64,000 bases of DNA, from the sequence record NC_047995.1; one strand, given 5' to 3'. Below are positions 16,537-62,182 of the stretch, in pieces; positions within the stretch are counted from its first letter, which is position 1, and every line of letters begins with the position of its first letter. The notes below the pieces were generated by a model. It did not search any database. It worked only from the letters and a program-made list of their open reading frames with translations, and had not been told where the DNA came from. The position numbers and the translations under genes were made by a program.

Positions 16537-16798
16537 CTCTATCCTCTAAAACAAATTGTAGTGTGCCCTGTATATTTACAGCTTCAAGGCGCTTACCTGT
16601 TGGCATTAACAGACCGTTCAACAGGCCAACGAAGTCAGCGCTGTGGCAGTCTGGAGCGATCTGGTGGACGTAGATATCGTCAGGAACATCCTGAGGATTA
16701 AGCTGCCAAGATGTTCTCAAGGCAGCACCCATGAATGCAGGACGCTCGACCAGATGCCTGTTCAGAAACGAACAAATATCTTCGGCGCTTAACGTCAT
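16502..16798 (-). CDS. Hypothetical protein (98 aa)
   Basis: ATGA overlap with the polymerase stop; overlaps the clamp start by 35 nt. Confidence 0.55.
   Translation of the reverse strand: MTLSAEDICSFLNRHLVERPAFMGAALRTSWQLNPQDVPDDIYVHQIAPDCHSADFVGLLNGLLMPTGKRLEAVNIQGTLQFVLEDRDEDLPTAEESR
16573..16581 (-). promoter_or_regulatory. Class A motif CTGTAAATA upstream of the clamp
   Basis: 37 nt upstream of the ATG. Confidence 0.55.
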
Positions 16799-19700: not shown

Positions 19701-19965
19701 TCCAATCGTCGAGCGTTGTCTTGACCGGAAACGTATCTTCAAGATACTGCATCTGGTTCAGGAACAACTCACCTTCGGTCGAGGTAAAGATCTTACCGTT
19801 ACGTAGGTCTTCGGATGGCATGTGATCAAGGACGAGTAGTGCTTTGCCGCCTTTAGCGCTTTTACTTACGCTTTTTAAAAGTCGCACACCGTCGTAGGTC
19901 TGCATGTCTGCAAACTGCTCCGGCGGGTCGAAGTCGAGAGCTATAAACTTTGGTTTGTTCACCAT
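16795..19965 (-). CDS. polA: Family A DNA polymerase: N-terminal UDG-like domain, 3'-5' exonuclease, polymerase
   Basis: Exo motifs VAVDTET, NAKFDL, YAGLD. Pol motifs TGRTSASDPNLQQVP, DYSAHEVR, AVKTVIFGLIY, NSPVQG, VHDS. N-terminal YKPDYVLTFGKAPFKAL resembles the UDG fold. Confidence 0.95.
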   Translation of the reverse strand: MVNKPKFIALDFDPPEQFADMQTYDGVRLLKSVSKSAKGGKALLVLDHMPSEDLRNGKIFTSTEGELFLNQMQYLEDTFPVKTTLDDWSFLVVSYNMFKTYEKGEQFKEDADVAFAARIREIIVDYKPDYVLTFGKAPFKALNNEKIQFSKDHYEHWYGVEIPTKVKFEGKKHSFIHLPNVSYHTVLNPMHIAGSSYTLGYMARWMLPWLNKGMRYKIDEVTCGKKRNWDLVYVTKVKQLEKILKRMKRAKKVAVDTETENLNRIKNKILTVQLSSDGQKAYVIPIYHRDSPFTPKELRRVSEMLKDYFEDNSNKYQIYTNAKFDLNVMRSNFGIRSYAANVWDIQAGEFANDENAKSLLNVTGAGYYNLANLTMQYGCQVYHEVSFGKEMRATIADVDLDESVQEYAGLDVIVPFRIAEKQMLRANDIKYAKYESMVSEQISDQIHAFSILETTGAGADIDYLFKLNLPNSPINEEIRNVEREFMNSPEVKAANKLICQDDNVPKMGLMGKVEVTKFDMSKSEHKQILFFDVMKLKPLKEGEQLRENGKKTGKLDKDFQAAYADIPLVALYSKLGKAYKLKNAYVNSLLKLWGESEDFKHDRSIRPTYGYLGVVTGRTSASDPNLQQVPSRSEMGKLIKRILIARKNRLLIKVDYSAHEVRGWSIISGDQGVADVFEQGRKLRHRFRTVPDPWIEHRVEAEGDVHKINAAYFFGIPNVMDVTKSVRNAVKTVIFGLIYQQGDKGLAKSTGRDVKEIAEIKGKFLTRFPVGLKWFDKIKKFAHENFFVESPVGRRRHLWGLMLPESHREANMVHAACDRRAVNSPVQGFGSDLMMSAIRILDRMKYEYWKANGDYPDFDMNVSVHDSLTVDCDYKWIFLALDMIERAMTSAVVEVVQKRHEGFEFTSVPEIDFEIGASEKDVQGWNFSYVQLRKLVRDGLMIKRDELGEKDLDVDKTVDSIMEDQYHLMSDWMKKQLWANSIKIRSMDKVNPLTNKDKKNVEEWLAELPKNTKTFEKYKAEEAAKKAAAAAGDGAPKKIKISKSMLKNALKGIGKK

Positions 19966-21404: not shown

Positions 21405-24400
21405 TTACACAGCTTTGCTTTTCGAAGTGGTCAGTTTCAGACGCTCAAGAGCCGTCGTCACTTTCTTGATGTTCGTGACGTTGTAGCCTGCTTTCACGAT
21501 CTTATTGATACGTGCTTTAGCGCCAGAGACATTTTTCACGAAACCAATCCACATCCCAGGTGCGGAGTCGAAGGTACCAAACTTACGAGTGTTCGGAATC
21601 TTCGTACCGATGAAGCGTTTCATCTGCGGGTTAGTGTTCAGGTCGAACATGATACGCAAACGATCTTCCATCACCATCGGGTATGCCTTGACGTGTTTCT
21701 TATCAGAGGCTGCCTTGTGGCGTACCAGGAAGAACTGCTTCAATTGCTCTTGGGATTTCAGAGCCAGCTTGATGTTAAAGCCCATACGCGGCGTAGACTC
21801 GTCGAAGAAGTCCAGAACAAACTCCAGGCGTTTCTCGGAGAGTTTGTCGAAGGACAGTTTCTTCTTGATCTCAATGAAGTCGAGCAGCTTCTCGAAGTCT
21901 TCATAGTAGGCGCAGTCGTAATACACGTAGTCACCGAACTCCACGAAGTCGAAGGCCTTGAGAGCTTTCGAATCAGGGTCGGTAGCGTTCGCGTAAATAG
22001 CCACGAAGCCGTTGTACACGGTAGGCGTCAGTTCGAGCGCCATGTCCGCACCACCCATGTCGTCCAGAGCAGCAGCAACAGGTTTCTTACGACGAGTTGT
22101 GTTGTCCAGCACAGGCAGGTCAGCAGGCTTACGACGACGAACACGGCCAGCAGCCTCAGCAACACCTTCGTTGATTGGCTTACCTTGCTCTTTGTTCTCT
22201 ACGCGTTTCTTAACACGGGCAGCTTTACGCTCCTGTACCTCGACCTTCTTCTCTGTCTCAACGGTATCGGCCGTCTGAGTCTCGTCCGCAATCGTGTCTT
22301 CAACTTCGATACGATTAGCTTCGGCGGTAGCACGTTTGCGATCCTTCTCATTCGCCCACGGCTTACGAACCTCGAAAAACTTCTTGAGGTCAGACTTATC
22401 AACTTTCGTTGCGATGTGAACCTTAGACGCAGGGAAGCTGACGGTCTCGCCAGTACCAGCCAGACGCACACGCACGGTGCTGATAGGACTGTCTGCACGG
22501 AGTTTACCGTCAACAGTACGCACAGTCACAGACACCACAACACCGTTACCGTACTCAGTAACGACAGGCGCACGGTTCAGAGAGTCTTTCAGCCCTTCGC
22601 CGCTTGTGAAGTTACGGTTACGTGCCCAGTCAAGCAGACGCTCAAGGCCCCAGCCGTAGCGGTCAGGGATCTTCTGGTTGGCAACGAATGGAGTTTGCTC
22701 CATCACACGGAAGTCGTTCAGAGCAGGAGTGGCAGGCAAGGCTTGCATTGCTGCAATCGTCGTCTTACGCATTTCCTGGAACTCTTGGGACTCGATATCG
22801 TTCAGTTCTTTCTTCGCGAGGAAGTAATCCTTGAAGTCTGCCAGAGTGTTGTTGTCAATCAGGAGCTTGGCGCTCATTTTGATTGGAGCCAGTTTGAACT
22901 GGTCGAGTGCTTCATAACGCTGGTTGCCTTTCTCGTCGAAACGAGTTTTCTCCAGTGTCTTCCACATCAGACGAGCGACCTTACCAACTTCGAGGGTCTT
23001 GTTCGTCATTACCCAGTCGATGAACACAACTTCACGAGCCATATCGCCAGGCTTACCGTTCTCGTCGAGCTTCGCAGCAGCAACGTCAGGACGGAAGATA
23101 CGCGCAGTAGACTGGTCGTATGTACCTGGTGACCACGGAGTATCGCAGCGGATGATACGGCTACCCATCTGCATGTTGTGGCCTTCGGAGATTGCCTGTT
23201 CGTTCGCAATCAGAATCTGGACGTTGTTGTCCGTCTTGAATGCGTCGAGGTTAGCGTCTTTGTTCTGGCCCAGCTTACCAACTTCACCGTGATACACTAC
23301 AGCGACTTTCTTGTAGTTCTCAGGCAGAGCATTGTAGATAGCGTTGGCGGCACGAACGTAACGCGTGAAGACAATCAGTTTACCCTGCACCTCAGGCTTC
23401 CAGTAATCTGGATCTTCTGGTGGAGGAGTCATTGACGGAGGCAGTGTCTGACGAGCGAACTCTTCGGACTGCTTACGAGCCAGATACTTCTGACCGTTGA
23501 ATACAGCAATGTCCAGTTCACGAGGAACAACACCAGGCTTCCATTCGAAGATCTGCTGTTCACTAACCATCTGGTCACGTTCAGGCTGCACTTCGAAGTG
23601 CTTCTTGATGCGGTCGATGATGGTCAGGACTTTGGCCGACGTGAAGTTGGTGACGCCAGCGGCTTCAAACGTCATACGTGCAACGTCATCACCCATAGGG
23701 TCGGTCAACATCATTTCCATACGCTGGAAGTACATGTTGAGGTCACCGTTAGTCGCTAACAGTGCTCCGAGGTCATCGCCTTCTTCGATATCGTCTTCGT
23801 CAATGTCAGAAGCGTTGTCACCATCGCCACCAGCATCTTCATCGTCGTCATCGCTGCCCGCAGAGGCTTTGCGCTTCGCAGCGTTGGCTGCTTCCTGCAA
23901 TTTCTCTAGCACCTGTGCATACATCGCGTTATACACCTCTTGGTGCAGCGCAGAGTTCGGTACAGATGGGTCATCGATCTCAACCTGAATGAAGGTATCA
24001 ATCGGGTTAGGCAGCATGAACGCCCAGTGCTTACGCTTGAACGAGATGAATGCAGTGTGGTTCGCCATACGAGAGTGAGCACGACGAATCATTTCGATAT
24101 CGTCCTTAGCACCATCATATGCAACATCCAGTGAGTCACCGAACATAGCAGGCGTCATCAGCGCAGCCTGACCAACGATATCGCGCACACGGTCCGTTAC
24201 CAGCGTACCAGTAGCGATACGTGCATAGCGAACAGATGGAGCAGTGAATACAGCTTTGGTGTTGAAGTGAACCTGAGAGCCTTGCTGGCCGCCAGAGAAG
24301 TTCTTCACCTTGTGTGATTCATCAAGCAGCACGTAGCTGAAACGGAAGCGGTTAACGAACTCTACCGCGCCGCGAATACGAACGCGCACACCACCAATGT

Positions 24401-27254
24401 CAACGTTGAACGTACCAGTCTGCAAGAAGCTCAGGCCGACAATGTAGAGCGTATTACGAGGAGCCTGTTGGATCACATCGTACATACGGTCTTCGCCCCA
24501 CGTGTTAACTGTGTCAGCAGTGATAGGCACTGCGTTCCAGCCGTCGACAATTTTGTGGAGGTCGTCACACCAGTTCGCTACGAGGTTAGACGGGCAGATG
24601 ATCAGAGGACGAATCGTTTCTTCGCCGAGGTCATCCAGCTCTTTAATCAGAGCAGCAACGTCAGACAGACCGATGATTGTCTTACCACCACCAGGCGCGA
24701 TGAAGATAGTCGCAAAGCGTGGACGCCGACGCAACGTTTTGTGCGCTTCAACCTGATGTGGAAGTAACGCGGCACCGTCACGTAAACCAGGGATACGGAT
24801 ATCGTCAATCGTGATACCGCTATCTGGTTTCAGTTTCTCAATCTCCACCTCAGCCTGTTCGAAATATTCGAGCGACTTAGGAATCACTTCGCTATACAGC
24901 GCGGCGAATGGAAGAATGATCTGTTGCAGACGGTCAGAGCCCGGTGCAGTGTCGCTGTCAATCAGAGAGCTGAACAGTTTCTTACGGTCAGACTTGGTGA
25001 TCGCGTTAGTCAGTTCACGGTACACCGCACCCCCGAAGTAGTTGTTCAGGCGTGCCATGTCAGCCAGCTTAGACGATTCACCCATCACGAAGTAGTGAGT
25101 GTGGGACGGCAGCGATTCGGTAGCGGCCTGAATGCTTCCCATCTCATTGAGAGAGGTCGTAATCAGGTTAGAGCCACGCAGACCAGCAGCATCGTTCAGC
25201 ACCCGCAGCATGATACGCAGCACTGTCATCGCAGGACGTTCGTCAGAGATCTCAGGAACCGTGAAGTCGTTCTCAATCAGGTTCTGATACAGGTTCTGGT
25301 CCATCGGGCTTTCTGCCAACGAAGCATTCTCTGCGTCCATGCCGACTGCGACACGCGCTTGCTGAATCAGAGTTTTCAGGTCAGGAACTTGTTTGTTCCG
25401 GAGCATGAACTCATACGTCTGACAGGTAGACGCGATGATCTGAATCAGTTCGTGGATGTTGGAGCCTTCGGTGCTGTTATACTTGATGGTGCTCTCAGAC
25501 ACAGCCTCCACCAGACGACCCGCACCAGATTCTGCTTTCGCCGCTTCAATCATCATGTCGTTTGATGTGCGATACGCAGCCATCATACCAGACGATTGAT
25601 TGTGATGGATGTTACCAATCACGTTAGCGACTGAACGGAAGTTAGGCGCTTCACCAGGCTCTGCGAAGTCGTAGCCCAGTGAGTCAGCGACGTCCAGAGC
25701 GTTCGGTGACTTCATACCGACAGTACGCGTTTCTTTAACGTCAAGGCCGCCGCCATTGGAGGTGTTCACGATCAGCGCGAAGTCAGGGTCGATACCGATA
25801 CACACGTTGCTAAAACGGTTAAGGGTCTTAGCCTTAGTCTGCACGTCACGGTCGAAGTCCAGATTACCGTTCTGAATAGCGAACATGTTGGTACGCAGGG
25901 TGTCGTGGTCAGTAGACAGCGGCACGCCTTTCTGGAACAGGTCATCGAGAACGTTGTTGAGCGTGGCTTCGTATGTCTTAACCATCTCAATGTCGATATC
26001 TTCACGACGAGGCAGCACAGCCAGAGTACCGTTCGGCATGATCGTCAGACCATTGTCGTCGGCAACAACGTCGTTAACCACGTAACCAAACTTCTCACGG
26101 AGTTTCTTCAACTCAGGCAGAGTGGTTGCAGAGGTAACGTAACGCGGGATACGCGCAGCACGGGTAATACCCGTACGAGTCGAACCAGCAACGCGGAAGT
26201 AGTAGCTCGCCCAACCCTGGAACCAACGATACAGACACATGGTCTGCGTGTCAGCGCCCTGACTGATGTACTCTACCATTTCCTTTTCGAAGTTAACGAT
26301 CAGGCCGCCTTCAACACGAATGTCGGTTGCGAGTGCGACTGCGTTAAAATCGACAGGCGTATCAGGACTGATCTTCATCGCCTGAATCTTGCGATCAATC
26401 ATCTGCTTGCCTGGGATAGGACGAATACCGATCGTCATGAAATCGCCCAGTGCTTCGGCAGTACCTTTGTCCAGATTACGGAACAGGTCGATATCAATGC
26501 CAGTCATTGCTGGGTGGATAGAACGCAGTGCCGCGTTATATACAGACCAGTCTTTGTCGAGAGGGATGCGAACCATCTTCGTATCAAACGCGTTGGAGTT
26601 GGTGCGCTCCACGCCGAAGATATCTTTGTACAGCGTCTTCGCAATGCGAATAGCAGCCTGCGCGATCTCAGAACTGTAGGTCTGGAGATTAGCACGTTCG
26701 AAATGCGCATCGTTGTCTACACGAGGACGGTCGCTACCCTGGTTGTTCAGAACGTTGAAGTTACCGTTCGAAGCCAGTGGGCTGGTAGGACATGGTGTGC
26801 CAGACATGATGATATCACGGCCGCCTGGGAAGCGCGTACTGTTTTCAATGATAGCACCAGACGACGCGGACAGATGCTCGGCCAGAGAACTCTTAATCTC
26901 ACGGCTCAGCTTGTCGCCATTCAGCGTCATGTTGATACGCATCACCGACAGGTCGATGTTCGCCTTAACACGCTTGGTGAAGTCTTCTGGTGCGACCTCC
27001 AGCATGTCTTCGAACTCTGCACCGTTAACAACGATGTAGTTGATCAGGTCGAATGCGGCATAGATACGAGCGACGGTTGATGCAGTGAACACAGCGAGAG
27101 TTTCGTAGTTGCGACGAGACTTCCCTGTGGCATACATCTTCGACATTTTTCCGTCGAACTCGGGCGGCAACGTTTTAACAGCAAGAGCCTGATTGAAGGT
27201 ATCGGCGATCTGCTGCGTGGCGGTTGCTGAGGTACTGATCATTTGATTCATCAT
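21405..27254 (-). CDS. Very large SNF2/SF2 helicase-domain protein (1949 aa)
   Basis: LLPHQVEA, APGGGKT, LLDESH, ATGT, ISEGHNMQ and DTPWSPGTYDQSTARIFR are SNF2 motifs; about 800 aa of unknown N-terminal sequence and an unknown C-terminal region. Confidence 0.85.
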   Translation of the reverse strand: MMNQMISTSATATQQIADTFNQALAVKTLPPEFDGKMSKMYATGKSRRNYETLAVFTASTVARIYAAFDLINYIVVNGAEFEDMLEVAPEDFTKRVKANIDLSVMRINMTLNGDKLSREIKSSLAEHLSASSGAIIENSTRFPGGRDIIMSGTPCPTSPLASNGNFNVLNNQGSDRPRVDNDAHFERANLQTYSSEIAQAAIRIAKTLYKDIFGVERTNSNAFDTKMVRIPLDKDWSVYNAALRSIHPAMTGIDIDLFRNLDKGTAEALGDFMTIGIRPIPGKQMIDRKIQAMKISPDTPVDFNAVALATDIRVEGGLIVNFEKEMVEYISQGADTQTMCLYRWFQGWASYYFRVAGSTRTGITRAARIPRYVTSATTLPELKKLREKFGYVVNDVVADDNGLTIMPNGTLAVLPRREDIDIEMVKTYEATLNNVLDDLFQKGVPLSTDHDTLRTNMFAIQNGNLDFDRDVQTKAKTLNRFSNVCIGIDPDFALIVNTSNGGGLDVKETRTVGMKSPNALDVADSLGYDFAEPGEAPNFRSVANVIGNIHHNQSSGMMAAYRTSNDMMIEAAKAESGAGRLVEAVSESTIKYNSTEGSNIHELIQIIASTCQTYEFMLRNKQVPDLKTLIQQARVAVGMDAENASLAESPMDQNLYQNLIENDFTVPEISDERPAMTVLRIMLRVLNDAAGLRGSNLITTSLNEMGSIQAATESLPSHTHYFVMGESSKLADMARLNNYFGGAVYRELTNAITKSDRKKLFSSLIDSDTAPGSDRLQQIILPFAALYSEVIPKSLEYFEQAEVEIEKLKPDSGITIDDIRIPGLRDGAALLPHQVEAHKTLRRRPRFATIFIAPGGGKTIIGLSDVAALIKELDDLGEETIRPLIICPSNLVANWCDDLHKIVDGWNAVPITADTVNTWGEDRMYDVIQQAPRNTLYIVGLSFLQTGTFNVDIGGVRVRIRGAVEFVNRFRFSYVLLDESHKVKNFSGGQQGSQVHFNTKAVFTAPSVRYARIATGTLVTDRVRDIVGQAALMTPAMFGDSLDVAYDGAKDDIEMIRRAHSRMANHTAFISFKRKHWAFMLPNPIDTFIQVEIDDPSVPNSALHQEVYNAMYAQVLEKLQEAANAAKRKASAGSDDDDEDAGGDGDNASDIDEDDIEEGDDLGALLATNGDLNMYFQRMEMMLTDPMGDDVARMTFEAAGVTNFTSAKVLTIIDRIKKHFEVQPERDQMVSEQQIFEWKPGVVPRELDIAVFNGQKYLARKQSEEFARQTLPPSMTPPPEDPDYWKPEVQGKLIVFTRYVRAANAIYNALPENYKKVAVVYHGEVGKLGQNKDANLDAFKTDNNVQILIANEQAISEGHNMQMGSRIIRCDTPWSPGTYDQSTARIFRPDVAAAKLDENGKPGDMAREVVFIDWVMTNKTLEVGKVARLMWKTLEKTRFDEKGNQRYEALDQFKLAPIKMSAKLLIDNNTLADFKDYFLAKKELNDIESQEFQEMRKTTIAAMQALPATPALNDFRVMEQTPFVANQKIPDRYGWGLERLLDWARNRNFTSGEGLKDSLNRAPVVTEYGNGVVVSVTVRTVDGKLRADSPISTVRVRLAGTGETVSFPASKVHIATKVDKSDLKKFFEVRKPWANEKDRKRATAEANRIEVEDTIADETQTADTVETEKKVEVQERKAARVKKRVENKEQGKPINEGVAEAAGRVRRRKPADLPVLDNTTRRKKPVAAALDDMGGADMALELTPTVYNGFVAIYANATDPDSKALKAFDFVEFGDYVYYDCAYYEDFEKLLDFIEIKKKLSFDKLSEKRLEFVLDFFDESTPRMGFNIKLALKSQEQLKQFFLVRHKAASDKKHVKAYPMVMEDRLRIMFDLNTNPQMKRFIGTKIPNTRKFGTFDSAPGMWIGFVKNVSGAKARINKIVKAGYNVTNIKKVTTALERLKLTTSKSKAV

Positions 27255-47847: not shown

Positions 47848-48171
47848 TTACTCCACCGTGTCGAGTGCTTTGGCCGTATACTCACGCAGAGTACGTTCGA
47901 TGTTAGTCGCCAACGTAGGATGACAGATAAGCTGGTGGTCTTTCATGTACACACGCAGAGAAGGACGCATCACCTTACGCGTTCTGGCATTCATGCGCAG
48001 CATACGATGCACAGGAGAGGTGAAGTATTCCTCTTCCACCTCTGACATGCAGTTAACATTGGCGACCACTTCGTACTTCGCAAAGATTTGTGGATTGCGA
48101 TTGATGAACGTAGGGTCCATCGGTACGCTATTCTTTTCGTAATCACGATTGAGTTGACCGAAGATCATCAT
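47848..48171 (-). CDS. Hypothetical protein (107 aa)
   Basis: ATGA overlap with the SbcC-like gene. Confidence 0.65.
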   Translation of the reverse strand: MMIFGQLNRDYEKNSVPMDPTFINRNPQIFAKYEVVANVNCMSEVEEEYFTSPVHRMLRMNARTRKVMRPSLRVYMKDHQLICHPTLATNIERTLREYTAKALDTVE

Positions 48172-50495
48172 ATCACCTTACGAGACAGACTGGACGTTCC
48201 ACCTTGTTTGGTCACTGTCCATTGATTGTTAGAGAAGTGCTCAACGTCATTCGGAGTTATCCAGTAGATGTTCGGGATAATCTGTTTGAGTATCGGCAGG
48301 AAGTTTTCAACGATGTGCTCGCTCACTGCTGGGCTGCAACTGTTATCAGGCTCGTCGAGGATGATGAAGTTCGTGCGGCGGTTAGCAGGGATGAACGGCA
48401 TGATCGCAACAGCAAACAACAGTCGGAAGCAGTTAGTCTCTGCACCACTCATGATACCAATGTCCGTAGTCTTCTTAGAAGTCATACGAGTCACGGTAGC
48501 ACCAACACCCTGTTTGGTGGTGAACAGTTCGAAACGCATCGGCTCAGGGAAGACAAGGCTGGAGTATTCGTTCAGCTTGTTTTCGATCTGCTTCAATCGG
48601 CTTTCGACCGCTTTCAATTTGAGAGCGTTGTTCGAGTATGCCTTATACAGGACTTCGAACACCTTGCGCTTATCGATCAGAGGCTGGAGCTTGGATAACT
48701 TACCACGGAGTTCACGCAGTGTTTCCTCGTAGTGTTCATGCTCCTGAATACGCATCTGGATGCCTTGCGCTTTGCGTTCCTTCTTGTCGATATCATTACG
48801 CAGTGCTTCGGATTTCGTTTCGATATCCTTGTAACGACCATCAAGCAGGTAGAACGGATCTTCTGGCTCACCGATAGCTTTCATCGCAGCAGTCAGGTCT
48901 TTCAGAATCTCAAGGTCCTTGATGCGGTTCTTGATCGTCTTGCGAGCTTTCTTAGGCTGCTTAACCGCTTTAGGTTTTTTGAGCGCTGCCTTACGTGCTT
49001 GCAGCTTCTCCAGCTTCTTCGCCTGTTCGAATTGTTCTTCGATGGCGTCGAGTTGCTTACCTAGTTTCTTGAGTTGTTTCTCAAGGGCAGCACGGTCATG
49101 CTTCGGCTTCTTCACCTTGTCGTCTTGCAACGCAGTGAGTTCGGCATTCAGCTTGTGGTAGTCGATAGCCTCAATACATTCGTCAATGATCGCTTGTGCT
49201 TTGGTTGCAGCGCGAGCCATTGCTTTGAGGTTGACACCCTGGCCACAGGTAGGGCAAGAGTTACCATCGTGATCGTGTTCTTCAAACGCACGATAAGCCT
49301 GAACTATTGCTTTGGACTCTGCTCGGGCATCTTGTGCCTCTTCCTGAGTTCGTTTAGGACTTTTGAGCTTAGACAGTCGCTTGGTGAGCTTCGCACAGGC
49401 TTCTCGCCAGTCGTCGTACTCTTCCTGTTGTTCATCTACTTTCTCCAGTAGTTCCTGGGCCGCTTCTTCCTCTTTAACCAGCTTGCCGTGTTGCTTACGC
49501 AGCTTTTTGTTATCGAGGTCCGCAACGTCACCGAGTGCTTTGATTCGTTTCTTAACGTCGGAGAGTTCCTGTTCGTACTCTTCCAGCGCTTCAACATAAT
49601 CATCGTACTTGTCATGATCAATCAATTGACCACGCAGGTCGTTCAGTTCGCCTTTGAGATCAGTTGTCTCAATGCCGAGAGTGTCCAGCTGGTGTTTCAG
49701 CTTCTCATACTTACGCGCATTACTACGCGCCGTACTAAGCTCCAGCAGTTCTTCGTTCAGGCGATTACGCCGCGCTTTCATCTTGTCCAGATGTTCGATG
49801 ATTGCTTTCAGCGTGTTCTTTTCTTCGGCGTGAATGGACAGCGCGTTCTGCTTACGCTGCGTCACGTCTAACATGTCAGCCAGACCTTTCGATTCTGTCT
49901 CGGCGTCTTTGGCCAAGTCCAGTTTCTTCTTCAACGCCATGCGAATGTTATCGAAGATATCGAGGTTGAACAGGCGAGTCAGATAGACCAAACGCTCTGC
50001 TGGTGTAGCGCGTTGGAACGGATGCGATATCTGCGACTGAATGTAGCAGTAGCTATAGAACTCTTCCTTAGAAAGAGGCCAGTGCTTCTGCACCCAACCG
50101 CGCGCTACGTCCTGACGACCAACCTTCTGGTCTTCTTTGTTGTAGTACACCTGATACTTCGTGGCTGTCTGCACGATACGCACAACGCCACCAAGAGGCG
50201 AGTTCCATGACAGATCAATCGAACTACCTTTGCCGAGCATGTTCCCCTTGTCTTTCTTCTTCATTGCAAGAGGGTCAGCTTCATACAGCAAGGTAGGTAT
50301 CGCAGCGAACAGCATACTCTTACCTACGCCGTTCGTGTTATCCTTAACGTTAGGGCTATCGAGGTTCTTTCCGCAGATTGTTGCGAAGCCCTCTTTGTCC
50401 AGGCCCGTGATATCGAGTTCCTTGTACACGCCAACGTCGCGCAAGTGAATCTCTTTCAGGCCGATGCCGTGCTGCTGTACTTTCTTTTTGGCCAT
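48168..50495 (-). CDS. sbcC: SbcC/Rad50/gp46-like SMC ATPase
   Basis: Walker A NGVGKS, Q-loop YIQSQ, coiled coils with a CPTCG zinc hook, signature MSGAE, Walker B IILDEPD. Confidence 0.92.
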   Translation of the reverse strand: MAKKKVQQHGIGLKEIHLRDVGVYKELDITGLDKEGFATICGKNLDSPNVKDNTNGVGKSMLFAAIPTLLYEADPLAMKKKDKGNMLGKGSSIDLSWNSPLGGVVRIVQTATKYQVYYNKEDQKVGRQDVARGWVQKHWPLSKEEFYSYCYIQSQISHPFQRATPAERLVYLTRLFNLDIFDNIRMALKKKLDLAKDAETESKGLADMLDVTQRKQNALSIHAEEKNTLKAIIEHLDKMKARRNRLNEELLELSTARSNARKYEKLKHQLDTLGIETTDLKGELNDLRGQLIDHDKYDDYVEALEEYEQELSDVKKRIKALGDVADLDNKKLRKQHGKLVKEEEAAQELLEKVDEQQEEYDDWREACAKLTKRLSKLKSPKRTQEEAQDARAESKAIVQAYRAFEEHDHDGNSCPTCGQGVNLKAMARAATKAQAIIDECIEAIDYHKLNAELTALQDDKVKKPKHDRAALEKQLKKLGKQLDAIEEQFEQAKKLEKLQARKAALKKPKAVKQPKKARKTIKNRIKDLEILKDLTAAMKAIGEPEDPFYLLDGRYKDIETKSEALRNDIDKKERKAQGIQMRIQEHEHYEETLRELRGKLSKLQPLIDKRKVFEVLYKAYSNNALKLKAVESRLKQIENKLNEYSSLVFPEPMRFELFTTKQGVGATVTRMTSKKTTDIGIMSGAETNCFRLLFAVAIMPFIPANRRTNFIILDEPDNSCSPAVSEHIVENFLPILKQIIPNIYWITPNDVEHFSNNQWTVTKQGGTSSLSRKVI

Positions 50496-57624: not shown

Positions 57625-57837
57625 TCATTTCTCAGGAGTAGGGGTAAAGGGACTGTGGACAAACGGGTTAGTCTTATCGACATACAGGAACCCGAATGCG
57701 TTTTGTTTGTAAGACTGACGCGCAGCCGATTGCTTGCGTTTGGCTTCGGCACGTTGCGCGTCCTGCTCGTCAAAGATACCTCGACGATGGAACTTAAAAT
57801 CAGGGTGTACTGAAATATCTTTGACGATAGCTGTCAT
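57625..57837 (-). CDS. Hypothetical protein (70 aa)
   Basis: AAGGA RBS. Confidence 0.6.
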   Translation of the reverse strand: MTAIVKDISVHPDFKFHRRGIFDEQDAQRAEAKRKQSAARQSYKQNAFGFLYVDKTNPFVHSPFTPTPEK

Positions 57838-57847
57838 ACGTTATTCC

Positions 57848-58345
57848 TTATACTGGCTTAAGGTTAAGGTGGTGCCACGGGAAGTCTGCTTTCTCCACCA
57901 GCTCGTTCGCTGTACCCATCTCCGAGAACTTATCGAACACATGGCCATACATCGCGGCGAACTCTGCGTTCTCCAACTCTGCCTGCCAGTCTTCATCATC
58001 GGTAACATGTTTCTGCCACACTTCGTCGTGCAACTTAGTGAAGGTGTCAGAACGCTTTGGGTAAAGCATGGAGAACAGGTCACGCGCAAAACAAACGCGA
58101 TACGTGCCTTTCTCTTTAAGAGCCTGCAAGGATGTCAGGGGATGCGCTGCATCAAAAGCAGCAAGCACTTCTCCATACTGTTTGAATAGACGCTTGTTCT
58201 TTACAGCAATCAATTCTAACGGACAATCTTGGATTAGACGCTTCACGGTTTTCTTAGAACGCAACTCTGGCCATTCGGTTGGTGGGAGCACAGCACTTTG
58301 AGATAACTTGAACTCAAGTCGAAACAGAATTTCAATAGGGCTCAT
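57848..58345 (-). CDS. Hypothetical protein (165 aa)
   Basis: ATGA overlap; GAGG RBS. Confidence 0.7.
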   Translation of the reverse strand: MSPIEILFRLEFKLSQSAVLPPTEWPELRSKKTVKRLIQDCPLELIAVKNKRLFKQYGEVLAAFDAAHPLTSLQALKEKGTYRVCFARDLFSMLYPKRSDTFTKLHDEVWQKHVTDDEDWQAELENAEFAAMYGHVFDKFSEMGTANELVEKADFPWHHLNLKPV

Positions 58346-59919
58346 TCTGCGTCCTCTAAAAATGTAAGGTGGTCGGAGAATTGCTTCTTAAGGAATAACG
58401 CACCGTCAGAATGAACCGAGTCACCGACCGTTTCCATTAAAGCGCCATCATGTTCCAGAGAATAAACATGCTTCACCTGCGTGTCATCCACGATAAGACG
58501 GAACAGACACTCAGACTCTATGCCGCTGAAAATGTGGTTGAGCACCTTTCGTCTGCGACGTTCTGATATTCTTGCTTTCTTGAGATCGTACTTAACGCCA
58601 GACTTGCACGTTAAAGTTTTTTCGCCATGTTTTGTCTCGCGGACCGAGTCAATATAAATATCGGTCAATGATTTAAGCGCTACGCTCAGTGGCAGCGCGT
58701 TGTTATTCCATTTACGCAAGAAGTCGAACACCTTCCGGAACTCTATGTGATTGGTAAGTTCCTGGAAGACACGACTCTTATACGATATGGCAAGTTGTCC
58801 CATTGAAAAGAGCGTGGCATAGAAACAAATCTTGGTCGCAGCTTTTGGCAAATCATTCCTGTGTGCGATATCGTCAACGGAGGTTACGTCGTCCATAAAC
58901 GAACAATGAATCCCGTGTGTTTCGAGTTCACGCAACAGAATGTTGAGCTGGCTGCTGGACATATCCCAGTTAGTACCTATCGCACTGCACTCCTGTTTAA
59001 GTTCAGCAGGGAATGACTGGAAGCCACCACCCTTCTCAAACAATCGTCCACCAATCTTCGCCAGACGGTAGACAGGCATGTAGCGAATAGTCAGAGGATG
59101 CTCACGCACAATCTGCACAGGTCCGCTCAGGATAGATTGAAGACTCGACAGCACATGATGGTACTGCCCCTGTGATCGCTGCGACTTCATATACGACTTA
59201 TGCTCAAGGTAAGCCAGAATGGGATCGATTAGAATTTCATTCGGAGCCAACTTGTTGAGCACGGACGTATAGAGTTTCTTCGCTTCACGGTCCCTGTTAG
59301 AACATAGCGCGGTGAGATCGTGTCGAGGCCATTTGAACGGCTTCTTCACTGCCTCCTCCAGCATGTCCTTAATCGTCTGACCATATTGTTCATTGACCAA
59401 ACGCAGGGGACTGTACAAGCGAGTTACCGACAACAGGTCTTTGCTTGTCTGCGGATTCTCAGGGTACATGCAGCCTAACACTCCCGGTTTTATGCGGAAG
59501 CGACGGCACACACCAGCCTTACCTACTTTGAATATGTGGCTTTTGTATTCGAGAACATTTTCGAGCAACCAATCAAGGGCTCTGCTAAAATGCTGATCTG
59601 TTTTTGCAAAGTTAGGCGATACAGGTCCGCCCCTTTGAGATTTTACCCCGAACACCATAGGCAACACTTTACGCCCGAACGTTGAAGGGAAAGGTGTCCA
59701 AACCTCACCGAACTTAGCGTTACGCTGTTTGCTCTTTGTTGGCGTATAGATTGACAATTGAAGCACATGCCAGAAGAACAGATTTATCTGGCGTCTGTAC
59801 TCCGCTTCGAATTTCTTAGGCCCATCGTAAGGACAGGCATAAACTACGTGGTGCTGAACCCATTGTATCGGAAACATCTCTTGATACGTGGGATTCTTGA
59901 CTAAATACGGAGAAGCCAT
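58342..59919 (-). CDS. Divergent superfamily-A polymerase palm protein (TV-Pol-like, possible primase/polymerase)
   Basis: Ordered motifs GGRLFEKGGGFQSFP, WDMSSSQLNIL, KAATKICFYATLF, NHIFSGIESECL and LEHDGAL parallel the PolA motifs; no exonuclease domain. Confidence 0.6.
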   Translation of the reverse strand: MASPYLVKNPTYQEMFPIQWVQHHVVYACPYDGPKKFEAEYRRQINLFFWHVLQLSIYTPTKSKQRNAKFGEVWTPFPSTFGRKVLPMVFGVKSQRGGPVSPNFAKTDQHFSRALDWLLENVLEYKSHIFKVGKAGVCRRFRIKPGVLGCMYPENPQTSKDLLSVTRLYSPLRLVNEQYGQTIKDMLEEAVKKPFKWPRHDLTALCSNRDREAKKLYTSVLNKLAPNEILIDPILAYLEHKSYMKSQRSQGQYHHVLSSLQSILSGPVQIVREHPLTIRYMPVYRLAKIGGRLFEKGGGFQSFPAELKQECSAIGTNWDMSSSQLNILLRELETHGIHCSFMDDVTSVDDIAHRNDLPKAATKICFYATLFSMGQLAISYKSRVFQELTNHIEFRKVFDFLRKWNNNALPLSVALKSLTDIYIDSVRETKHGEKTLTCKSGVKYDLKKARISERRRRKVLNHIFSGIESECLFRLIVDDTQVKHVYSLEHDGALMETVGDSVHSDGALFLKKQFSDHLTFLEDAE

Positions 59920-60416
59920 TGCATACTCCAGAAAAAGTGCTTCTTGCTCTTGTTTTTTACAGTTTTAGGTGCTTTCGACCATTTTCTTTTGCTTTAGGTA
60001 CAAAACAGAGTCACATCTAACCCGTATTCAACCCATACACACCTCTACAGGGCCATCCGCCCCTCCCAACCAGGGGACCTGCTCACCGCAACAGCTAACT
60101 CATAGCTTCGCTGGGCAACTAGCAGCTAGGCGGGCTGGGATAGCGGGTAGATAGCGCTAGATTCATCAAGGACAATAGGGCTTTAATGGGTATCCGGAGT
60201 AGCAATTTAGCGCCTTCGTAGATCGCCGTATGAAGCTCCACGCGTATAGGGATTACGCCGTAGATGCCTTAAAAGCGAAAAGTCTTAGGCTGAATTTGGG
60301 TCAAAAATACCATGTAACTTTTTTTCGAAAACTCGCACTCAACTGTAGATTAGAGATGAATTTTATGAAAAACAGAGGAAAACCCGAATAAAATCAAGGA
60401 CTTTCCTCCGCGATCA
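59920..60416. other. About 500 bp non-coding region (origin or ncRNA candidate)
   Basis: No credible CDS; a C-rich block (about 60015-60090) is followed by a G-rich block (about 60120-60195), then an AT-rich tail. Confidence 0.35.
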
Positions 60417-61067
60417 TCACTTTTTCTGCGAAACACGCTTCCCGAGCTTAACTCCAATCTGCGTCAGAATGCGTTTCACTGTTTCACCGTCGTGTTCTTC
60501 CATTGCAGCGCCTAAACGCTCGCCCTGTTCACGCGATAGCTCCGGCATAATCATTTTCAGCATCATAGAGCGCTGTTTGGCTGCTTTAGACTTGCCTTTC
60601 GATACAGACACGCCATCATTCGCTGCTAACGCGCTGCTAATCGCCTTTTGCACACGACGATTGCCGAAGATATCGCCGAATATGTCACCGAACAGGTCTT
60701 TGAACGACATACCGCCGCTCATGATATCGTTCTTGGTGAAACGCACAGGCTGTCCAAGCGCGTTCGTGCTATGCGTCGATTCAACCTGATTCGTTGTACG
60801 CCCACCAGCACGGAAGTTCTCGTCAGGACGTGACGCTTTGCCTTCTGCACCTGGCTTAGTGTTGCCGTTGCGTAAATCAGGGTCACCTTCAACAGCCTTA
60901 TCAGGGTCGAACATATCGTCCGCTGTTTCGCTCTGGTTAGGGTCGAAGGGAATCTTGCCTGTCAGCTTATTCGGGTCAGGCCAGCTATCAGGAATGTCTG
61001 ACGCTGGTTGTGGCTTATTGGTCATATCGCCGTTCGCTTCGCTGTTCAGGCTGATTTTGACTTTCAT
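60417..61067 (-). CDS. Hypothetical protein with a Pro/Asp-rich N-terminal half and a KISL leader
   Basis: AGGAG RBS; MKVKISLNSEA. Confidence 0.7.
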   Translation of the reverse strand: MKVKISLNSEANGDMTNKPQPASDIPDSWPDPNKLTGKIPFDPNQSETADDMFDPDKAVEGDPDLRNGNTKPGAEGKASRPDENFRAGGRTTNQVESTHSTNALGQPVRFTKNDIMSGGMSFKDLFGDIFGDIFGNRRVQKAISSALAANDGVSVSKGKSKAAKQRSMMLKMIMPELSREQGERLGAAMEEHDGETVKRILTQIGVKLGKRVSQKK

Positions 61068-61075
61068 GGTTGCTC

Positions 61076-62182
61076 CTATCGGATTTTATAGCCTTTGAAA
61101 ATGTTGTACGCAATCTCTTTGCGCTGTACAGGACGAGTGGTGCACACCCATTCCCATTGTTCGTTGCGAGCCGTACGCTTCTTAGGTGCTTCCATTACTT
61201 TCAGCACATAGTTCTTGAACGGCAGGACGAGAATGTCCTCAGGCTCAATAGCGCCGCTACGTGCAGGCAGAACTATCGTGATGTTACCGACAGTCAGTTC
61301 CTGATCGTAGTTCAACACGTTCGCTTCTTCGCTGATGTTGCCTTTAACAGCCGGCACACCTAAATCGAAGATGATCGTTGCGTGTGTGAATGCCTCAACG
61401 CTTTTAACGCGGACAGTCACATGCTTACCTCGCCACGGCTCCAGATTTGCAGCAGTCAGTTCCTGCTCAACACCATTGATAACCAGCACAGGGCGAGGGA
61501 ATGCAGGCAGCATCTTCTCATTCAGCCTCACCGAATAAGTCGCCTGCGTAAAGTATTTTGGAATAAGCTGATCGAAATCAACGTGTCCGTCTTTACGCAC
61601 CTGCCTAAACGTCGCAGGGCTGGTGGACTGATCGAGCGTGTACGCTGTCAATGACTTTGCGTGGTGGTGCGTCATAACGTTGTACACGAAGCCTGTGCTG
61701 ATAAACCCAGGCACAATACCCTGACGGAAACAGATGCCACAGTTGACGTTGTTACCTGCATCCCATCCGTTTGAAACTTCTTCGTCGCCGTTGCCCATGA
61801 GGTCAGCAGCGTCCATAACTGCGTTCATACCGTCGTCGATATCGTCCAGTGACACTGCTTGGCGTCCACCGCCGAACATGCCTTTCGATACCGTACCGAT
61901 TTTAACACCAGCGTCCATCGCAGATGATTCACGGCCGAGCGACTTCATACCTCCGACCTGTTCGTCGAAGATATCGTTGTCCACTTTGTTGCAGCTACAG
62001 GTTAGGCCCATCTTCGCTTTCTTGAAGATGATGATATCGGTGGCGTCCACCTGCAATGCCTGTTCCACTTTCGACTGCACAACCTTCTGCACCGAGTCGA
62101 GGCGTTGCTGGACACGTTCCGTTTCGTAAGTCTTATGGCGGTCGTAAGCATTCCGAGGGCGTCCTCGTTCAATCCAGCTCAT
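61076..62182 (-). CDS. Putative virion head-completion/neck-type protein with Cys motifs
   Basis: TCSC and CGICFRQG Cys pairs; upstream CTAATTT; function is a guess from context. Confidence 0.45.
   Translation of the reverse strand: MSWIERGRPRNAYDRHKTYETERVQQRLDSVQKVVQSKVEQALQVDATDIIIFKKAKMGLTCSCNKVDNDIFDEQVGGMKSLGRESSAMDAGVKIGTVSKGMFGGGRQAVSLDDIDDGMNAVMDAADLMGNGDEEVSNGWDAGNNVNCGICFRQGIVPGFISTGFVYNVMTHHHAKSLTAYTLDQSTSPATFRQVRKDGHVDFDQLIPKYFTQATYSVRLNEKMLPAFPRPVLVINGVEQELTAANLEPWRGKHVTVRVKSVEAFTHATIIFDLGVPAVKGNISEEANVLNYDQELTVGNITIVLPARSGAIEPEDILVLPFKNYVLKVMEAPKKRTARNEQWEWVCTTRPVQRKEIAYNIFKGYKIR

What the first reader, a model, noticed from the sequence alone, without database searches (positions are those of the whole stretch)
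58342..59919. A second, highly divergent family-A polymerase palm protein (TV-Pol-like) with no exonuclease
Compared by eye with the phage's own PolA, five motifs occur in the same order: GGRLFEKGGGFQSFP vs TGRTSASDPNLQQVP; WDMSSSQLNIL vs VDYSAHEVRGW (motif A Asp); KAATKICFYATLF vs RNAVKTVIFGLIY (motif B Lys); NHIFSGIESE vs NSPVQGFGSD; LEHDGAL vs SVHDSLT (motif C HD). The catalytic aspartates appear intact. The N-terminal 250 aa or so are unrelated and could bind DNA. The TV-Pol family, related to PolA and T7 RNAP, was described in phages and mobile elements as a predicted primase/polymerase. Automated annotation would probably call this ORF hypothetical.
Basis: partly seen in the sequence, partly recalled or inferred. 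Interest (0 to 1): 0.8.

Follow-up and report, generated by a model that had tools for sequence, protein, structure and literature searches.

The report
Swappable second polymerase in jumbo phage
This unannotated gene of an Erwinia jumbo phage encodes a stripped-down relative of DNA polymerase I (TV-Pol family, no proofreading domain) with an intact active site, and together with the small gene behind it and the DNA in front of it, it is exchanged as a unit between otherwise nearly identical phages.

Summary
The window is Erwinia phage vB_EamM_Alexandra. The ORF at 58342-59919 (-) is gp222, 525 aa, annotated hypothetical. All five motif strings exist in gp222 and in the phage's PolA (16795-19965 -), in the same order.

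[quoted passage not shown] Outside its own clade, some of its best viral matches are virophage TV-Pol-helicase proteins. Across 44 relatives at 15-25% identity the only invariant residues are R292, D319, K363, G466, E468, D491 and G492. My family profiles hit one ORF in Microcystis phage Ma-LMM01 (gp030, beside transposases), a phage that Iyer et al. 2008 name as a TV-Pol carrier. No exonuclease domain is present.

New here: the non-coding region, gp222 and the abutting gene gp221 (57838-60418) form a cassette. It is swapped between phages whose flanking proteins are 84-96% identical, while polymerase identity falls to about 22% and the partner becomes unrelated. The phage also has PolA, a DnaG-type primase, a helicase, a clamp loader and SSB, so gp222 is accessory.

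Membership of the TV-Pol family is well supported. The primase-polymerase role is inferred, not shown. This is a new member of a known, almost uncharacterised family, in an unusual genomic setting.

The parts
57838..60418 (-). Exchangeable cassette: upstream non-coding region + TV-Pol-like gene gp222 + abutting partner gene gp221
   Evidence: blastn against pEa_SNUABM_35 (same genus): 86% identity runs up to 60419 (stop of gp223) and resumes at 57837 (start of gp220), with nothing alignable between. Flanking proteins are 84-96% identical, the polymerase about 22%, and the partner is replaced by an unrelated 343-aa protein. It is among the lowest-GC stretches of its size in the window: 46.9% against 49.6 +/- 1.3%, lowest 0.7% of same-size windows.
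58342..59919 (-). gp222, 525 aa: TV-Pol-family (N-domain subtype) exonuclease-less family-A polymerase homolog
59320..59919 (-). Residues 1-200: N-terminal domain conserved across the wider family (FFWH, LPMVFG, RALDWL, CREFRI motifs). It probably corresponds to the 'TV-PolN' domain of Iyer et al. A winged-helix-like helix + beta-hairpin at about 114-143 is only a weak inference.
   Evidence: The N-terminal alignment includes mobile-element members and Ma-LMM01 gp030. Secondary structure is mostly helical, with a hairpin at 123-128/138-143. A weak ArsR-family match at E 0.86. No PDB hit for the domain on its own.
59125..59319 (-). Residues 201-265: helical segment preceding the palm, probably the thumb
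   Evidence: Helices 211-222, 231-243 and 247-264. The global hhalign alignment covers 202-525 and starts at the first residue of my PolA polymerase-domain segment (PolA residue 520 onwards).
59008..59052 (-). Residues 290-304, GGRLFEKGGGFQSFP: beta-hairpin with invariant R292, counterpart of PolA TGR...LQQVP
   Evidence: R292 is invariant in 44 sequences. hhalign pairs it with PolA TGRTSASDPNLQQVP. Strands 284-286 and 293-295.
58936..58971 (-). Residues 317-328, NWDMSSSQLNIL: motif A with invariant D319 (codon 58963-58965)
   Evidence: D319 is invariant and N317 and Q324 nearly so. D319 lies at the end of strand 316-320, followed by helix 323-334. hhalign does not put this motif in register with PolA.
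58804..58845 (-). Residues 359-372, KAATKICFYATLFS: motif B (O-helix) with invariant K363 and Y367
   Evidence: Aligned to PolA RNAVKTVIFGLIY and to T7 DNA polymerase RDNAKTFIYGFLYGAG (E 2.5, not significant on its own).
58510..58539 (-). Residues 461-470, NHIFSGIESE: helix motif with invariant G466 and E468, counterpart of PolA NSPVQGFGSD
58438..58461 (-). Residues 487-494, SLEHDGAL: motif C hairpin with invariant D491 and G492 (D491 codon 58447-58449)
   Evidence: Global hhalign pairs EHD with PolA VHD. Hairpin 482-488/492-497.
57848..58345 (-). gp221, 165 aa: partner gene. Its ATG overlaps the gp222 stop codon (ATGA), which suggests translational coupling. Fold and function unknown.
   Evidence: Coordinates. 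Only 3 homologs (100, 80, 65%), and they track the closest polymerase subtype. In 20 related genomes an ORF always starts -3 to +38 nt from the polymerase stop. AF2 pLDDT 44, unusable. No PHROG, NCBIfam or PDB match.
59920..60416 (-). 497-bp non-coding region upstream of gp222. Conserved blocks: 60379-60404, 60305-60324, 60268-60284, 60146-60194, 59920-59975. They are separated by non-conserved sequence.
   Evidence: Three-way alignment with pEa_SNUABM_40 and metagenomic locus L038. A gap of 257-497 bp is present in all 20 related genomes, and gaps of 367-1072 bp in more distant phage members. No Rfam match. No excess of sigma-70 promoter-like sites. GTCCTTGAT occurs twice here.

Best explanation
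gp222 is a catalytically competent member of the TV-Pol family. It is a minimal polymerase of the family-A fold (thumb, palm, fingers) with no proofreading domain, preceded by the roughly 200-aa N-terminal domain typical of the mobile-element subset of that family.

It is an accessory enzyme. The phage has its own PolA, DnaG-type primase, helicase, clamp loader and SSB. gp222 is expressed as a unit with the gene that abuts its stop codon (gp221) and a long non-coding leader, and the three parts are exchanged together between related jumbo phages.

The most likely activity is template-directed DNA synthesis that the enzyme can start itself or with its partner's help, that is, primase-polymerase activity. 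This follows the original prediction for TV-Pols and the one biochemically studied protein that Iyer et al. placed in the family (CCPol-MP, a dNTP-using primase that needs a small partner protein). A plausible role is to start or restart DNA synthesis at particular sites, with polymerase, partner and possibly the adjacent non-coding DNA co-adapted.

Shown: fold, invariant catalytic residues, family membership, absence of an exonuclease, cassette exchange, co-variation with the partner, presence of a canonical replisome. Inferred: enzymatic activity, priming, dNTP use, physical interaction with gp221, and any binding to the upstream region.
For: [quoted passage not shown] In BFVD the matches outside its own clade include virophage TV-Pol-helicase proteins such as Zamilon (E 1.7e-5) and the Qinghai Lake virophage 'helicase/primase/polymerase', interleaved with phage Pol I proteins and unnamed entries.

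Active site: R292, D319, K363, G466, E468, D491 and G492 are the only invariant columns in 44 sequences at 15-25% identity. They are kept in every cassette type.

Family: HMM hits to Ma-LMM01 gp030, unique in that genome, at E 7e-6 and 1.6e-26. Relatives lie beside a resolvase, integrase, AlpA, R-M systems and an OLD nuclease, as in PMC2579912. 392 cluster representatives match at E<=1e-3.

No exonuclease: no PF01612 or NCBIfam hit, while the phage PolA and its relatives carry PF01612+PF00476.

Accessory status: primase gp230 (phrog_47, E 9e-24) and the helicase; PolA and the DnaX-like clamp loader; SSB annotated.

Cassette and co-variation.

Precedent for partner-dependent priming with dNTPs: PMC7581432, read.
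Against: No activity data exist for any N-domain TV-Pol (PMC7581432 says so).

The contexts that led to the primase prediction are absent around gp222: there is no D5-like helicase, resolvase, integrase or transposase.

The phage already has a DnaG-type primase, so a second primase is not obviously needed.

The partner shows no sign of an OB fold. It is predicted all-helical, though at unusable confidence. Partner types are mutually unrelated, which is odd for a conserved mechanistic role.

CCPol is much closer to canonical PolA than gp222 is (PMC10201439), so the analogy is loose.

No convincing iterons were found in the upstream region. The N-terminal domain is not more variable than the catalytic domain, which gives no support for co-evolution of a DNA-recognition domain with its site.
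Confidence: 0.45

Rival explanations
1. Primer-dependent accessory DNA polymerase for repair, gap filling or lesion bypass. It would be an exonuclease-less family-A enzyme like Pol theta or Pol nu that never primes, and the partner would be a processivity or targeting factor.
For: Pol theta and Pol nu are among the top structural matches. CCPol without its partner only extends primers (PMC7581432). The gene sits in a DNA-metabolism region with a Holliday-junction resolvase, clamp loader and Rad50-like ATPase. Close phage relatives sit beside a 5'-3' exonuclease, a DHHA1-domain (RecJ-like) protein and ThyX.
Against: A housekeeping repair enzyme would not be expected to be swapped as a cassette between near-identical genomes, or to diverge to 22% while the main PolA stays 76-89% identical. 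The long conserved leader and the co-varying partner point to a specificity function.
Confidence: 0.2
2. Conflict module, meaning phage-phage competition, superinfection exclusion or counter-defence. The polymerase would make a DNA product de novo or without a template (decoy, signal or toxic DNA), and the variable partner would act as regulator, immunity factor or target-recognition factor. Diversity would be kept up by frequency-dependent selection.
For: The pattern is that of a hypervariable island in a conserved backbone. For backbones >=85% identical, polymerase identity ranges 11-100% (median 44%) and partner identity has a median of 13%. Exchange crosses genera: pEa_SNUABM_2 polymerase is 76% identical to Y3's and 73% to the Yersinia phage's, but 47% to Alexandra's. 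Bacterial relatives sit in islands with R-M systems, an OLD-family nuclease and AAA_15/21 ATPases. The cassette has low GC.
Against: No PADLOC model matches any of 44 family members at a meaningful level. No toxin, nuclease or sensor domain was found in any partner. The gene is present at the same locus in all 44 related phage records, which fits a core function better than an optional weapon.
Confidence: 0.2
3. Small single-subunit RNA polymerase, or RNA-primer synthase, related to T7 RNA polymerase. It would transcribe a subset of phage genes or make RNA primers from a promoter in the adjacent non-coding region.
For: T7 RNAP and mitochondrial RNAP are structural matches. Some of them cover more of the query (TM normalised to query up to 0.41) than the DNA polymerases do (about 0.33). 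Iyer et al. link TV-Pols to both lineages. The steric-gate position could not be assigned, because motif A is not in register.
Against: The DNA polymerase matches have better E-values (1.5e-4 against 6e-3 and worse) and far lower rmsd. Motif B has Tyr at K+4, as in T7 DNA polymerase. 525 aa leaves no room for the promoter-recognition domains of T7-like RNAPs. The phage encodes its own sigma factor, which implies use of host RNAP. CCPol prefers dNTPs.
Confidence: 0.08
4. Inactive remnant of a mobile element, or a pseudo-enzyme kept for a structural or regulatory role.
For: The family is typical of transposon-like elements (PMC2579912). There is no recombinase next to gp222, so if it came from an element, that element is no longer mobile.
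Against: The catalytic residues are the only invariant positions across 44 very divergent sequences and across all cassette types. The ORF is intact in all 44 phage records. That is the signature of selection on catalysis.
Confidence: 0.04

Closest known systems
TV-Pol family, subset with the N-terminal 'TV-PolN' domain (Iyer, Abhiman & Aravind 2008, PMC2579912), e.g. the element in Microcystis phage Ma-LMM01 (gp030)
   Same: Domain order is the same: N-terminal helical domain, thumb, Arg-bearing hairpin, palm with two Asp, and fingers with the motif-B Lys. There is no exonuclease. Size is about 500 aa. Homology is detectable with HMMER (E 1.6e-26 to gp030) and extends into the N-terminal domain. 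The gene co-exists with a complete canonical replication set.
   Different: No resolvase, integrase, transposase or D5-like helicase is adjacent. The gene sits at a fixed locus of a lytic jumbo phage lineage, always with a long non-coding leader and an abutting, hypervariable partner gene. It is exchanged between phages as a cassette rather than being part of a transposon.
CCPol-MP primase of staphylococcal SCCmec elements / PolA-SSB primases (PMC7581432, PMC10061031)
   Same: An exonuclease-deficient family-A polymerase encoded directly upstream of a small partner protein. CCPol was included in TV-Pol by Iyer et al. It provides the only biochemistry in the family: dNTP-dependent de novo priming that requires the partner.
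   Different: [quoted passage not shown] MP is an OB-fold beta-barrel, whereas gp221 is predicted helical at low confidence and has no detectable relatives outside its subtype. No helicase is present in the operon.
Canonical family-A DNA polymerases (Pol I/Klenow, Taq, Bst, T7 DNA polymerase, and the phage's own PolA at 16795-19965)
   Same: Same fold of the polymerase domain. The motifs come in the same order, with equivalent Arg, Asp, Lys and Asp.
   Different: No 3'-5' exonuclease domain. No PF00476 or NCBIfam hit. About 12-15% identity in structural alignments. The fingers are much shorter (41 against 73 residues between motifs A and B). Motif C reads EHDG. It evolves far faster than the PolA in the same phages (36-47% against 76-89% identity).
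Virophage replication proteins (Sputnik V13 / Zamilon type: TV-Pol fused to a D5-like helicase)
   Same: They are among the better structural matches outside gp222's own clade (Zamilon E 1.7e-5, Qinghai Lake virophage).
   Different: Those proteins have a C-terminal helicase and are the sole replicative enzyme of their genome. gp222 has no helicase domain and is accessory.

Membership tests
TV-Pol (Iyer et al. 2008) | Sequence-profile homology to a named member of the family | tested here: met
   An HMM of the Alexandra clade (A1) hits Ma-LMM01 gp030 at E 7e-6, and the wider profile (A2) hits it at E 1.6e-26, over the N-domain, the central motifs and the HDG motif. No other ORF of the 162-kb genome is hit, and the canonical PolA profile hits a different gene, gp178. 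Caveat: the part of the paper I could read names the phage, not the gene. gp030 is identified by its uniqueness and by the adjacent transposases.
TV-Pol (Iyer et al. 2008) | [quoted passage not shown] | tested here: met
   R292 is invariant in 44 sequences, lies in hairpin 284-286/293-295, and is aligned with the PolA TGR motif.
TV-Pol (Iyer et al. 2008) | RRM-like palm with two conserved metal-binding aspartates | tested here: met
   D319 and D491 are invariant. Strand and hairpin positions are as in family A. Foldseek matches PolA palm-containing domains. The Asp-Asp distance was not measurable because no coordinates are available.
TV-Pol (Iyer et al. 2008) | Fingers module with the RxxxK motif, plus a conserved aspartate | tested here: inconclusive
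   K363 is invariant. Alexandra has K359 at the -4 position, but that position is not conserved across the family. The conserved fingers aspartate was not identified.
TV-Pol (Iyer et al. 2008) | Thumb built on two antiparallel helices N-terminal to the hairpin | tested here: inconclusive
   Helices 211-222, 231-243 and 247-264 precede the hairpin and lie within the globally aligned span 202-525. Packing could not be inspected without coordinates.
TV-Pol (Iyer et al. 2008) | No fusion or linkage to a nuclease/proofreading domain | tested here: met
   No PF01612, NCBIfam or PHROG exonuclease hit in gp222 or in the cassette genes.
TV-Pol (Iyer et al. 2008) | Association with a D5-like helicase, or with a resolvase/integrase/transposase in a mobile element | tested here: not met
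   None of these lies next to gp222 or its orthologs. The feature is met for distant members: resolvase, integrase/AlpA island, and transposases in Ma-LMM01. This is a contextual feature, not a structural one.
TV-Pol (Iyer et al. 2008) | Combined primase and DNA polymerase activity (predicted for the family) | not testable with these tools
   Needs biochemistry.
Canonical family-A DNA polymerase (PF00476 / Pol I-like) | Match to the curated PolA sequence models | tested here: not met
   No Pfam domain on record for any of 26 homologs. No NCBIfam hit. The PDB profile search gives T7 DNA polymerase only at E 2.5. The family HMM does not hit the phage PolA (E 5.3).
Canonical family-A DNA polymerase (PF00476 / Pol I-like) | Polymerase-domain fold with motifs A, B and C | tested here: met
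   Foldseek E 1.5e-4 to 1e-2 against Taq, Klenow, Bst, Pol theta/nu and DpoZ. Global hhalign P 8e-5.
Canonical family-A DNA polymerase (PF00476 / Pol I-like) | 3'-5' exonuclease (or vestigial exonuclease) domain N-terminal to the polymerase domain | tested here: not met
   The N-terminal 200 aa are mostly helical, with no PF01612 hit. PolA relatives of this phage all carry PF01612.
PolA-SSB primase (CCPol-MP type) | Small OB-fold ssDNA-binding partner encoded immediately downstream | tested here: inconclusive
   An abutting partner gene is always present. The gp221 model has pLDDT 44 and is predicted all-helical. There is no sequence match to anything.
PolA-SSB primase (CCPol-MP type) | Helicase in the same operon, and a polymerase retaining part of the exonuclease domain | tested here: not met
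   No helicase in the cassette or its immediate flanks. No exonuclease remnant was detected.
T7-like single-subunit RNA polymerase | Best structural and sequence affinity to RNAPs, with a large N-terminal promoter-binding domain and specificity loop | tested here: not met
   RNAP hits are weaker (E 6e-3 to 0.4) and have rmsd of about 7-21 A, most of them 14-21 A. The protein is 525 aa, against about 880 aa or more for T7-like RNAPs (established knowledge).

The most novel reading that the evidence does not exclude
The three-part cassette (non-coding region, exonuclease-less family-A polymerase, hypervariable partner) is a self-contained specificity module. The polymerase would start DNA synthesis de novo at, or under control of, its own cis region with the help of its cognate partner. 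The module would be kept diverse by selection, either as an origin/initiator 'incompatibility' unit or as a weapon or shield in phage-phage or phage-host conflict. That would be a new functional class for family-A polymerases in viruses: a modular, exchangeable initiator alongside a complete canonical replisome.
Probability: 0.25. Interest if true: 0.8.

Novelty: new member of a known kind. Interest (0 to 1): 0.55.

Why it matters
Apart from CCPol, which is atypical and close to canonical PolA, no TV-Pol has been studied biochemically. The N-domain subtype is widespread: 392 cluster representatives at 50% identity, found in phages, cyanobacteria, Desulfobacterales, Bacteroidota and others.

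These jumbo phages offer a tractable natural experiment. At least five cassette types, with intact active sites but different partners, sit in near-isogenic backbones. Cognate and non-cognate polymerase/partner/leader combinations can therefore be compared directly.

If the enzyme primes DNA synthesis, that would extend the short list of primases outside the DnaG and AEP families and help explain how family-A polymerases can start chains.

In practical terms, 44 deposited genomes and PHROG 30690 could be re-annotated from 'hypothetical' to 'TV-Pol family polymerase-like protein'.

Tried and rejected
Sequence-only links to known proteins failed:
- phmmer and two profile searches against PDB
- NCBIfam
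- hhalign of the family against the single PolA sequence (prob 0.16%)
- local hhalign against a PolA profile (prob 7%, E 0.005)

PADLOC defence models: no meaningful hit for 44 members.

Partner gene:
- only 3 homologs
- AF2 pLDDT 44, so I ran no further search on it
- no PHROG, NCBIfam or PDB match for any partner type
- no homology between partner types by hhalign

N-terminal domain: a profile of 14 N-terminal fragments found nothing in PDB. The winged-helix idea rests only on secondary structure and one E 0.86 match, and I do not claim it. The domain is not more variable than the catalytic domain, so I dropped the argument that a recognition domain co-evolves with its site.

Upstream region:
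- no Rfam family
- sigma-70-like sites are not enriched (4 found, 3.5 expected)
- no convincing iterons; the short repeats are near chance level except GTCCTTGAT
- TTACATGGTATTT is not a recurrent phage promoter motif in the window

Other dead ends:
- The supplement of the TV-Pol paper, which holds the family alignment, is not held.
A narrower alignment found 18 bacterial loci but none of the species named in the 2008 paper.
Full report
**What is there.** The window is a stretch of Erwinia phage vB_EamM_Alexandra (NC_047995.1; window position = record position minus 124000), a 266.5-kb jumbo phage. The ORF at 58342-59919 on the minus strand is real. It has an ATG start preceded by GGAG, it is 525 aa long, and it is annotated as hypothetical protein gp222. 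Its only family assignment is PHROG 30690, 'unknown function'. The phage's own PolA is the 1056-aa ORF at 16795-19965 (-).

**Checking the observation.** Ordinary sequence searches do not connect the two proteins. There is no PDB hit with the single sequence or with profiles. There is no NCBIfam hit. hhalign against the single PolA sequence is not significant. Three independent lines show that the resemblance is real.

- An AlphaFold2 model built on 26 homologs is confident (mean pLDDT 87.3, pTM 0.82). Every one of its top 50 Foldseek matches in PDB is a family-A DNA polymerase or a T7-like/mitochondrial RNA polymerase. These include Taq at E 1.5e-4, apicoplast Pol, Klenow, Bst, Pol theta, Pol nu and DpoZ.
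- A profile of 44 family members was aligned globally to a profile of the PolA polymerase domain, built from 41 sequences (the phage's PolA plus 40 relatives). The result is P = 8e-5. It pairs GGR with TGR, FQSFP with LQQVP, K363 with the motif-B lysine, NHIFSGIES with NSPVQGFGSD, and EHD with VHD. Only motif A is out of register.
- In those 44 sequences, which are 15-25% identical to gp222, the only invariant columns are R292, D319, K363, G466, E468, D491 and G492. Y284, G299, Q301, K308, N317, Q324, E489 and H490 are nearly invariant.

Secondary structure places D319 at the end of a strand followed by a helix. It places D491 at the tip of a beta-hairpin. Both match family-A palms.

**Which family.** An exhaustive profile search finds 392 cluster representatives at E <= 1e-3. 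Most of them match only the C-terminal 250 residues strongly, but the closer ones match full length. Distant members are encoded directly after a serine resolvase and next to an OLD-family nuclease. Others sit in an integrase/AlpA island followed by a type I restriction-modification system. These are the contexts that Iyer, Abhiman and Aravind described for the TV-Pol subset with an N-terminal domain (PMC2579912).

As a direct test I fetched the whole genome of Microcystis phage Ma-LMM01, which that paper names as carrying a TV-Pol element. One ORF, gp030, matches my profiles. It is 506 aa, hypothetical, and adjacent to two transposase genes. It scores E 7e-6 with the Alexandra-clade profile alone and E 1.6e-26 with the wider one. 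The match covers the N-terminal domain, the central motifs and the HDG motif. The canonical PolA profile hits a different gene, gp178.

In the viral structure library, the matches beyond gp222's own clade include virophage TV-Pol-helicase proteins (Zamilon, Qinghai Lake virophage). They are interleaved with phage Pol I proteins and unnamed entries.

gp222 therefore belongs to the TV-Pol lineage by sequence and to family A by fold. It has no exonuclease domain, whereas the phage PolA and all its relatives carry PF01612 plus PF00476. The one adjustment is that only about 200 residues, not 250, lie outside the polymerase fold. Those residues form a domain conserved throughout the wider family.

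I compared Alexandra with pEa_SNUABM_35, a member of the same genus. Nucleotide identity is 86% up to the stop codon of gp223 (60419) and again from the start codon of gp220 (57837). Nothing is alignable in between. Flanking proteins are 84-96% identical. The polymerase is about 22% identical. The downstream gene is replaced by an unrelated 343-aa protein.

The exchange crosses genus boundaries. pEa_SNUABM_2 has an Alexandra-like backbone (91-96% identity). Its polymerase is 47% identical to Alexandra's. That same polymerase is 76% identical to that of Y3 and 73% to that of a Yersinia phage whose backbone is only about 63% identical.

In 20 genomes the arrangement is constant:
- 257-497 bp of non-coding DNA upstream
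- the polymerase gene
- a partner ORF starting -3 to +38 nt from the polymerase stop (in Alexandra an ATGA overlap)

For genome pairs with backbones at least 85% identical, polymerase identity ranges from 11 to 100% (median 44%) and partner identity has a median of 13%. When polymerases are at least 70% identical, partners are at least 48% identical.

There are at least five partner types: three of 155-174 aa and two related ones of 343-390 aa. Apart from those two longer, mutually related ones, the types are unrelated to each other by profile comparison, and none matches any library. gp221 itself has only three homologs, and they track the closest polymerase subtype.

Every cassette type keeps the catalytic residues. 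In the pEa_SNUABM_35 type, only His490 becomes Phe. The cassette is among the lowest-GC stretches of the window. The main PolA of the same phages stays 76-89% identical.

**The upstream region.** Alignment of three type-A cassettes shows five sharply conserved blocks separated by scrambled sequence. The first blocks are shared with type-C cassettes. The region has no Rfam match, no excess of sigma-70-like sites and no convincing iterons. The motif GTCCTTGAT occurs twice, inside conserved blocks. More distant phage members also have a 367-1072 bp gap upstream and a small ORF abutting the stop codon. The region is probably regulatory. Whether the polymerase binds it is untested.

**Function.** The phage does not need gp222 for a basic replisome. 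It has the following:
- PolA and a DnaX-like clamp loader
- a 1949-aa helicase, and a DnaG-type primase (gp230, phrog_47, E 9e-24, annotated hypothetical)
- SSB, UvsX and a sigma factor
- relatives with an annotated primase, helicase and SSB (PMC6143709)

The invariance of the active site argues for a working enzyme. The best-supported activity is DNA synthesis that can start without a pre-existing primer, possibly with the partner's help. That is by analogy with the family prediction and with CCPol-MP, a dNTP-using primase that needs its small partner (PMC7581432). The analogy is loose. CCPol is close to canonical PolA (PMC10201439). Its partner is an OB-fold barrel, whereas gp221 is predicted helical at unusable confidence. 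No helicase or recombinase accompanies gp222.

The cassette behaviour equally fits a specificity or conflict module. No PADLOC model matches. An RNA polymerase role is unlikely but not excluded, because the steric-gate position could not be assigned.

I put about 0.9 on 'active TV-Pol-family polymerase without proofreading'. I put about 0.45 on the full statement that includes priming.

**Novelty and verdict.** The TV-Pol family has been known since 2008, and a phage-borne member was part of its description. gp222 is therefore a new member of a known kind. It is unannotated in all 44 deposited genomes that carry it.

What is new is the setting. The locus is fixed in a lytic jumbo phage lineage, and the polymerase, a hypervariable partner and a leader are exchanged as a unit while the active site is conserved. 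No paper found with the literature tools describes this. Interest is moderate to good: not a new fold or system, but a clean and experimentally approachable entry into an almost unstudied polymerase family.

Noticed in passing
window 48168-50495 (-): gp207, annotated hypothetical, is a Rad50/SbcC-like SMC-family ATPase (NCBIfam NF003034, E 2e-17, with several other Rad50/SMC models).
   Followed up: no
L012:2458-3540 (-) = record 190457-191539, just outside the window: gp230, annotated hypothetical, matches DnaG-type DNA primase families (phrog_47, E 9e-24, and five other primase PHROGs). It is the phage's canonical primase.
   Followed up: partly
window 59929-59939 and 60418-60428: An 11-nt perfect inverted repeat (CAGAAAAAGTG / CACTTTTTCTG) brackets the whole non-coding region, from the stop of gp223 to just upstream of the gp222 start. 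The rough chance expectation is about 0.05. The proximal arm is conserved in pEa_SNUABM_40 and partly in L038.
   Followed up: partly
window 60165-60173 and 60393-60401: GTCCTTGAT occurs 4 times in the window against 0.4 expected. Two copies lie in conserved blocks of the leader of gp222.
   Followed up: partly
window 16795-19965 (-), residue 863 onward: Motif C of the phage's main PolA reads VHDS rather than the usual HDE. Some PolA relatives in other phages (P0239, P0242, P0270, P0286) carry inteins (PF14528 + PF14890).
   Followed up: no
window 21405-27254 (-): A very large (1949 aa) helicase, phrog_21391. The helicase core lies in roughly residues 800-1690, and the remainder is uncharacterised.
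   Followed up: no
L010:4527-4918 and L013:3034-3195: The Yersinia phage fHe-Yen9-02 (118c, 119c) and pEa_SNUABM_40 (00223) records annotate small ORFs inside the region that is non-coding in the other phages. These are probably over-calls.
   Followed up: no
L042:5929-7000; L043:194-2944: More distant family members show variations: a 644-aa version with a 1072-bp upstream gap on a 56-kb phage-like contig that has a clamp loader, and a 916-aa version with N- and C-terminal extensions of unknown nature.
   Followed up: no
window 60417-61067 (-) and 61076-62182 (-): The two genes upstream of the cassette (gp223, gp224; PHROGs 31583 and 21298, unknown function) are conserved in all relatives. 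gp223 is low-complexity and acidic in its N-terminal half.
   Followed up: no
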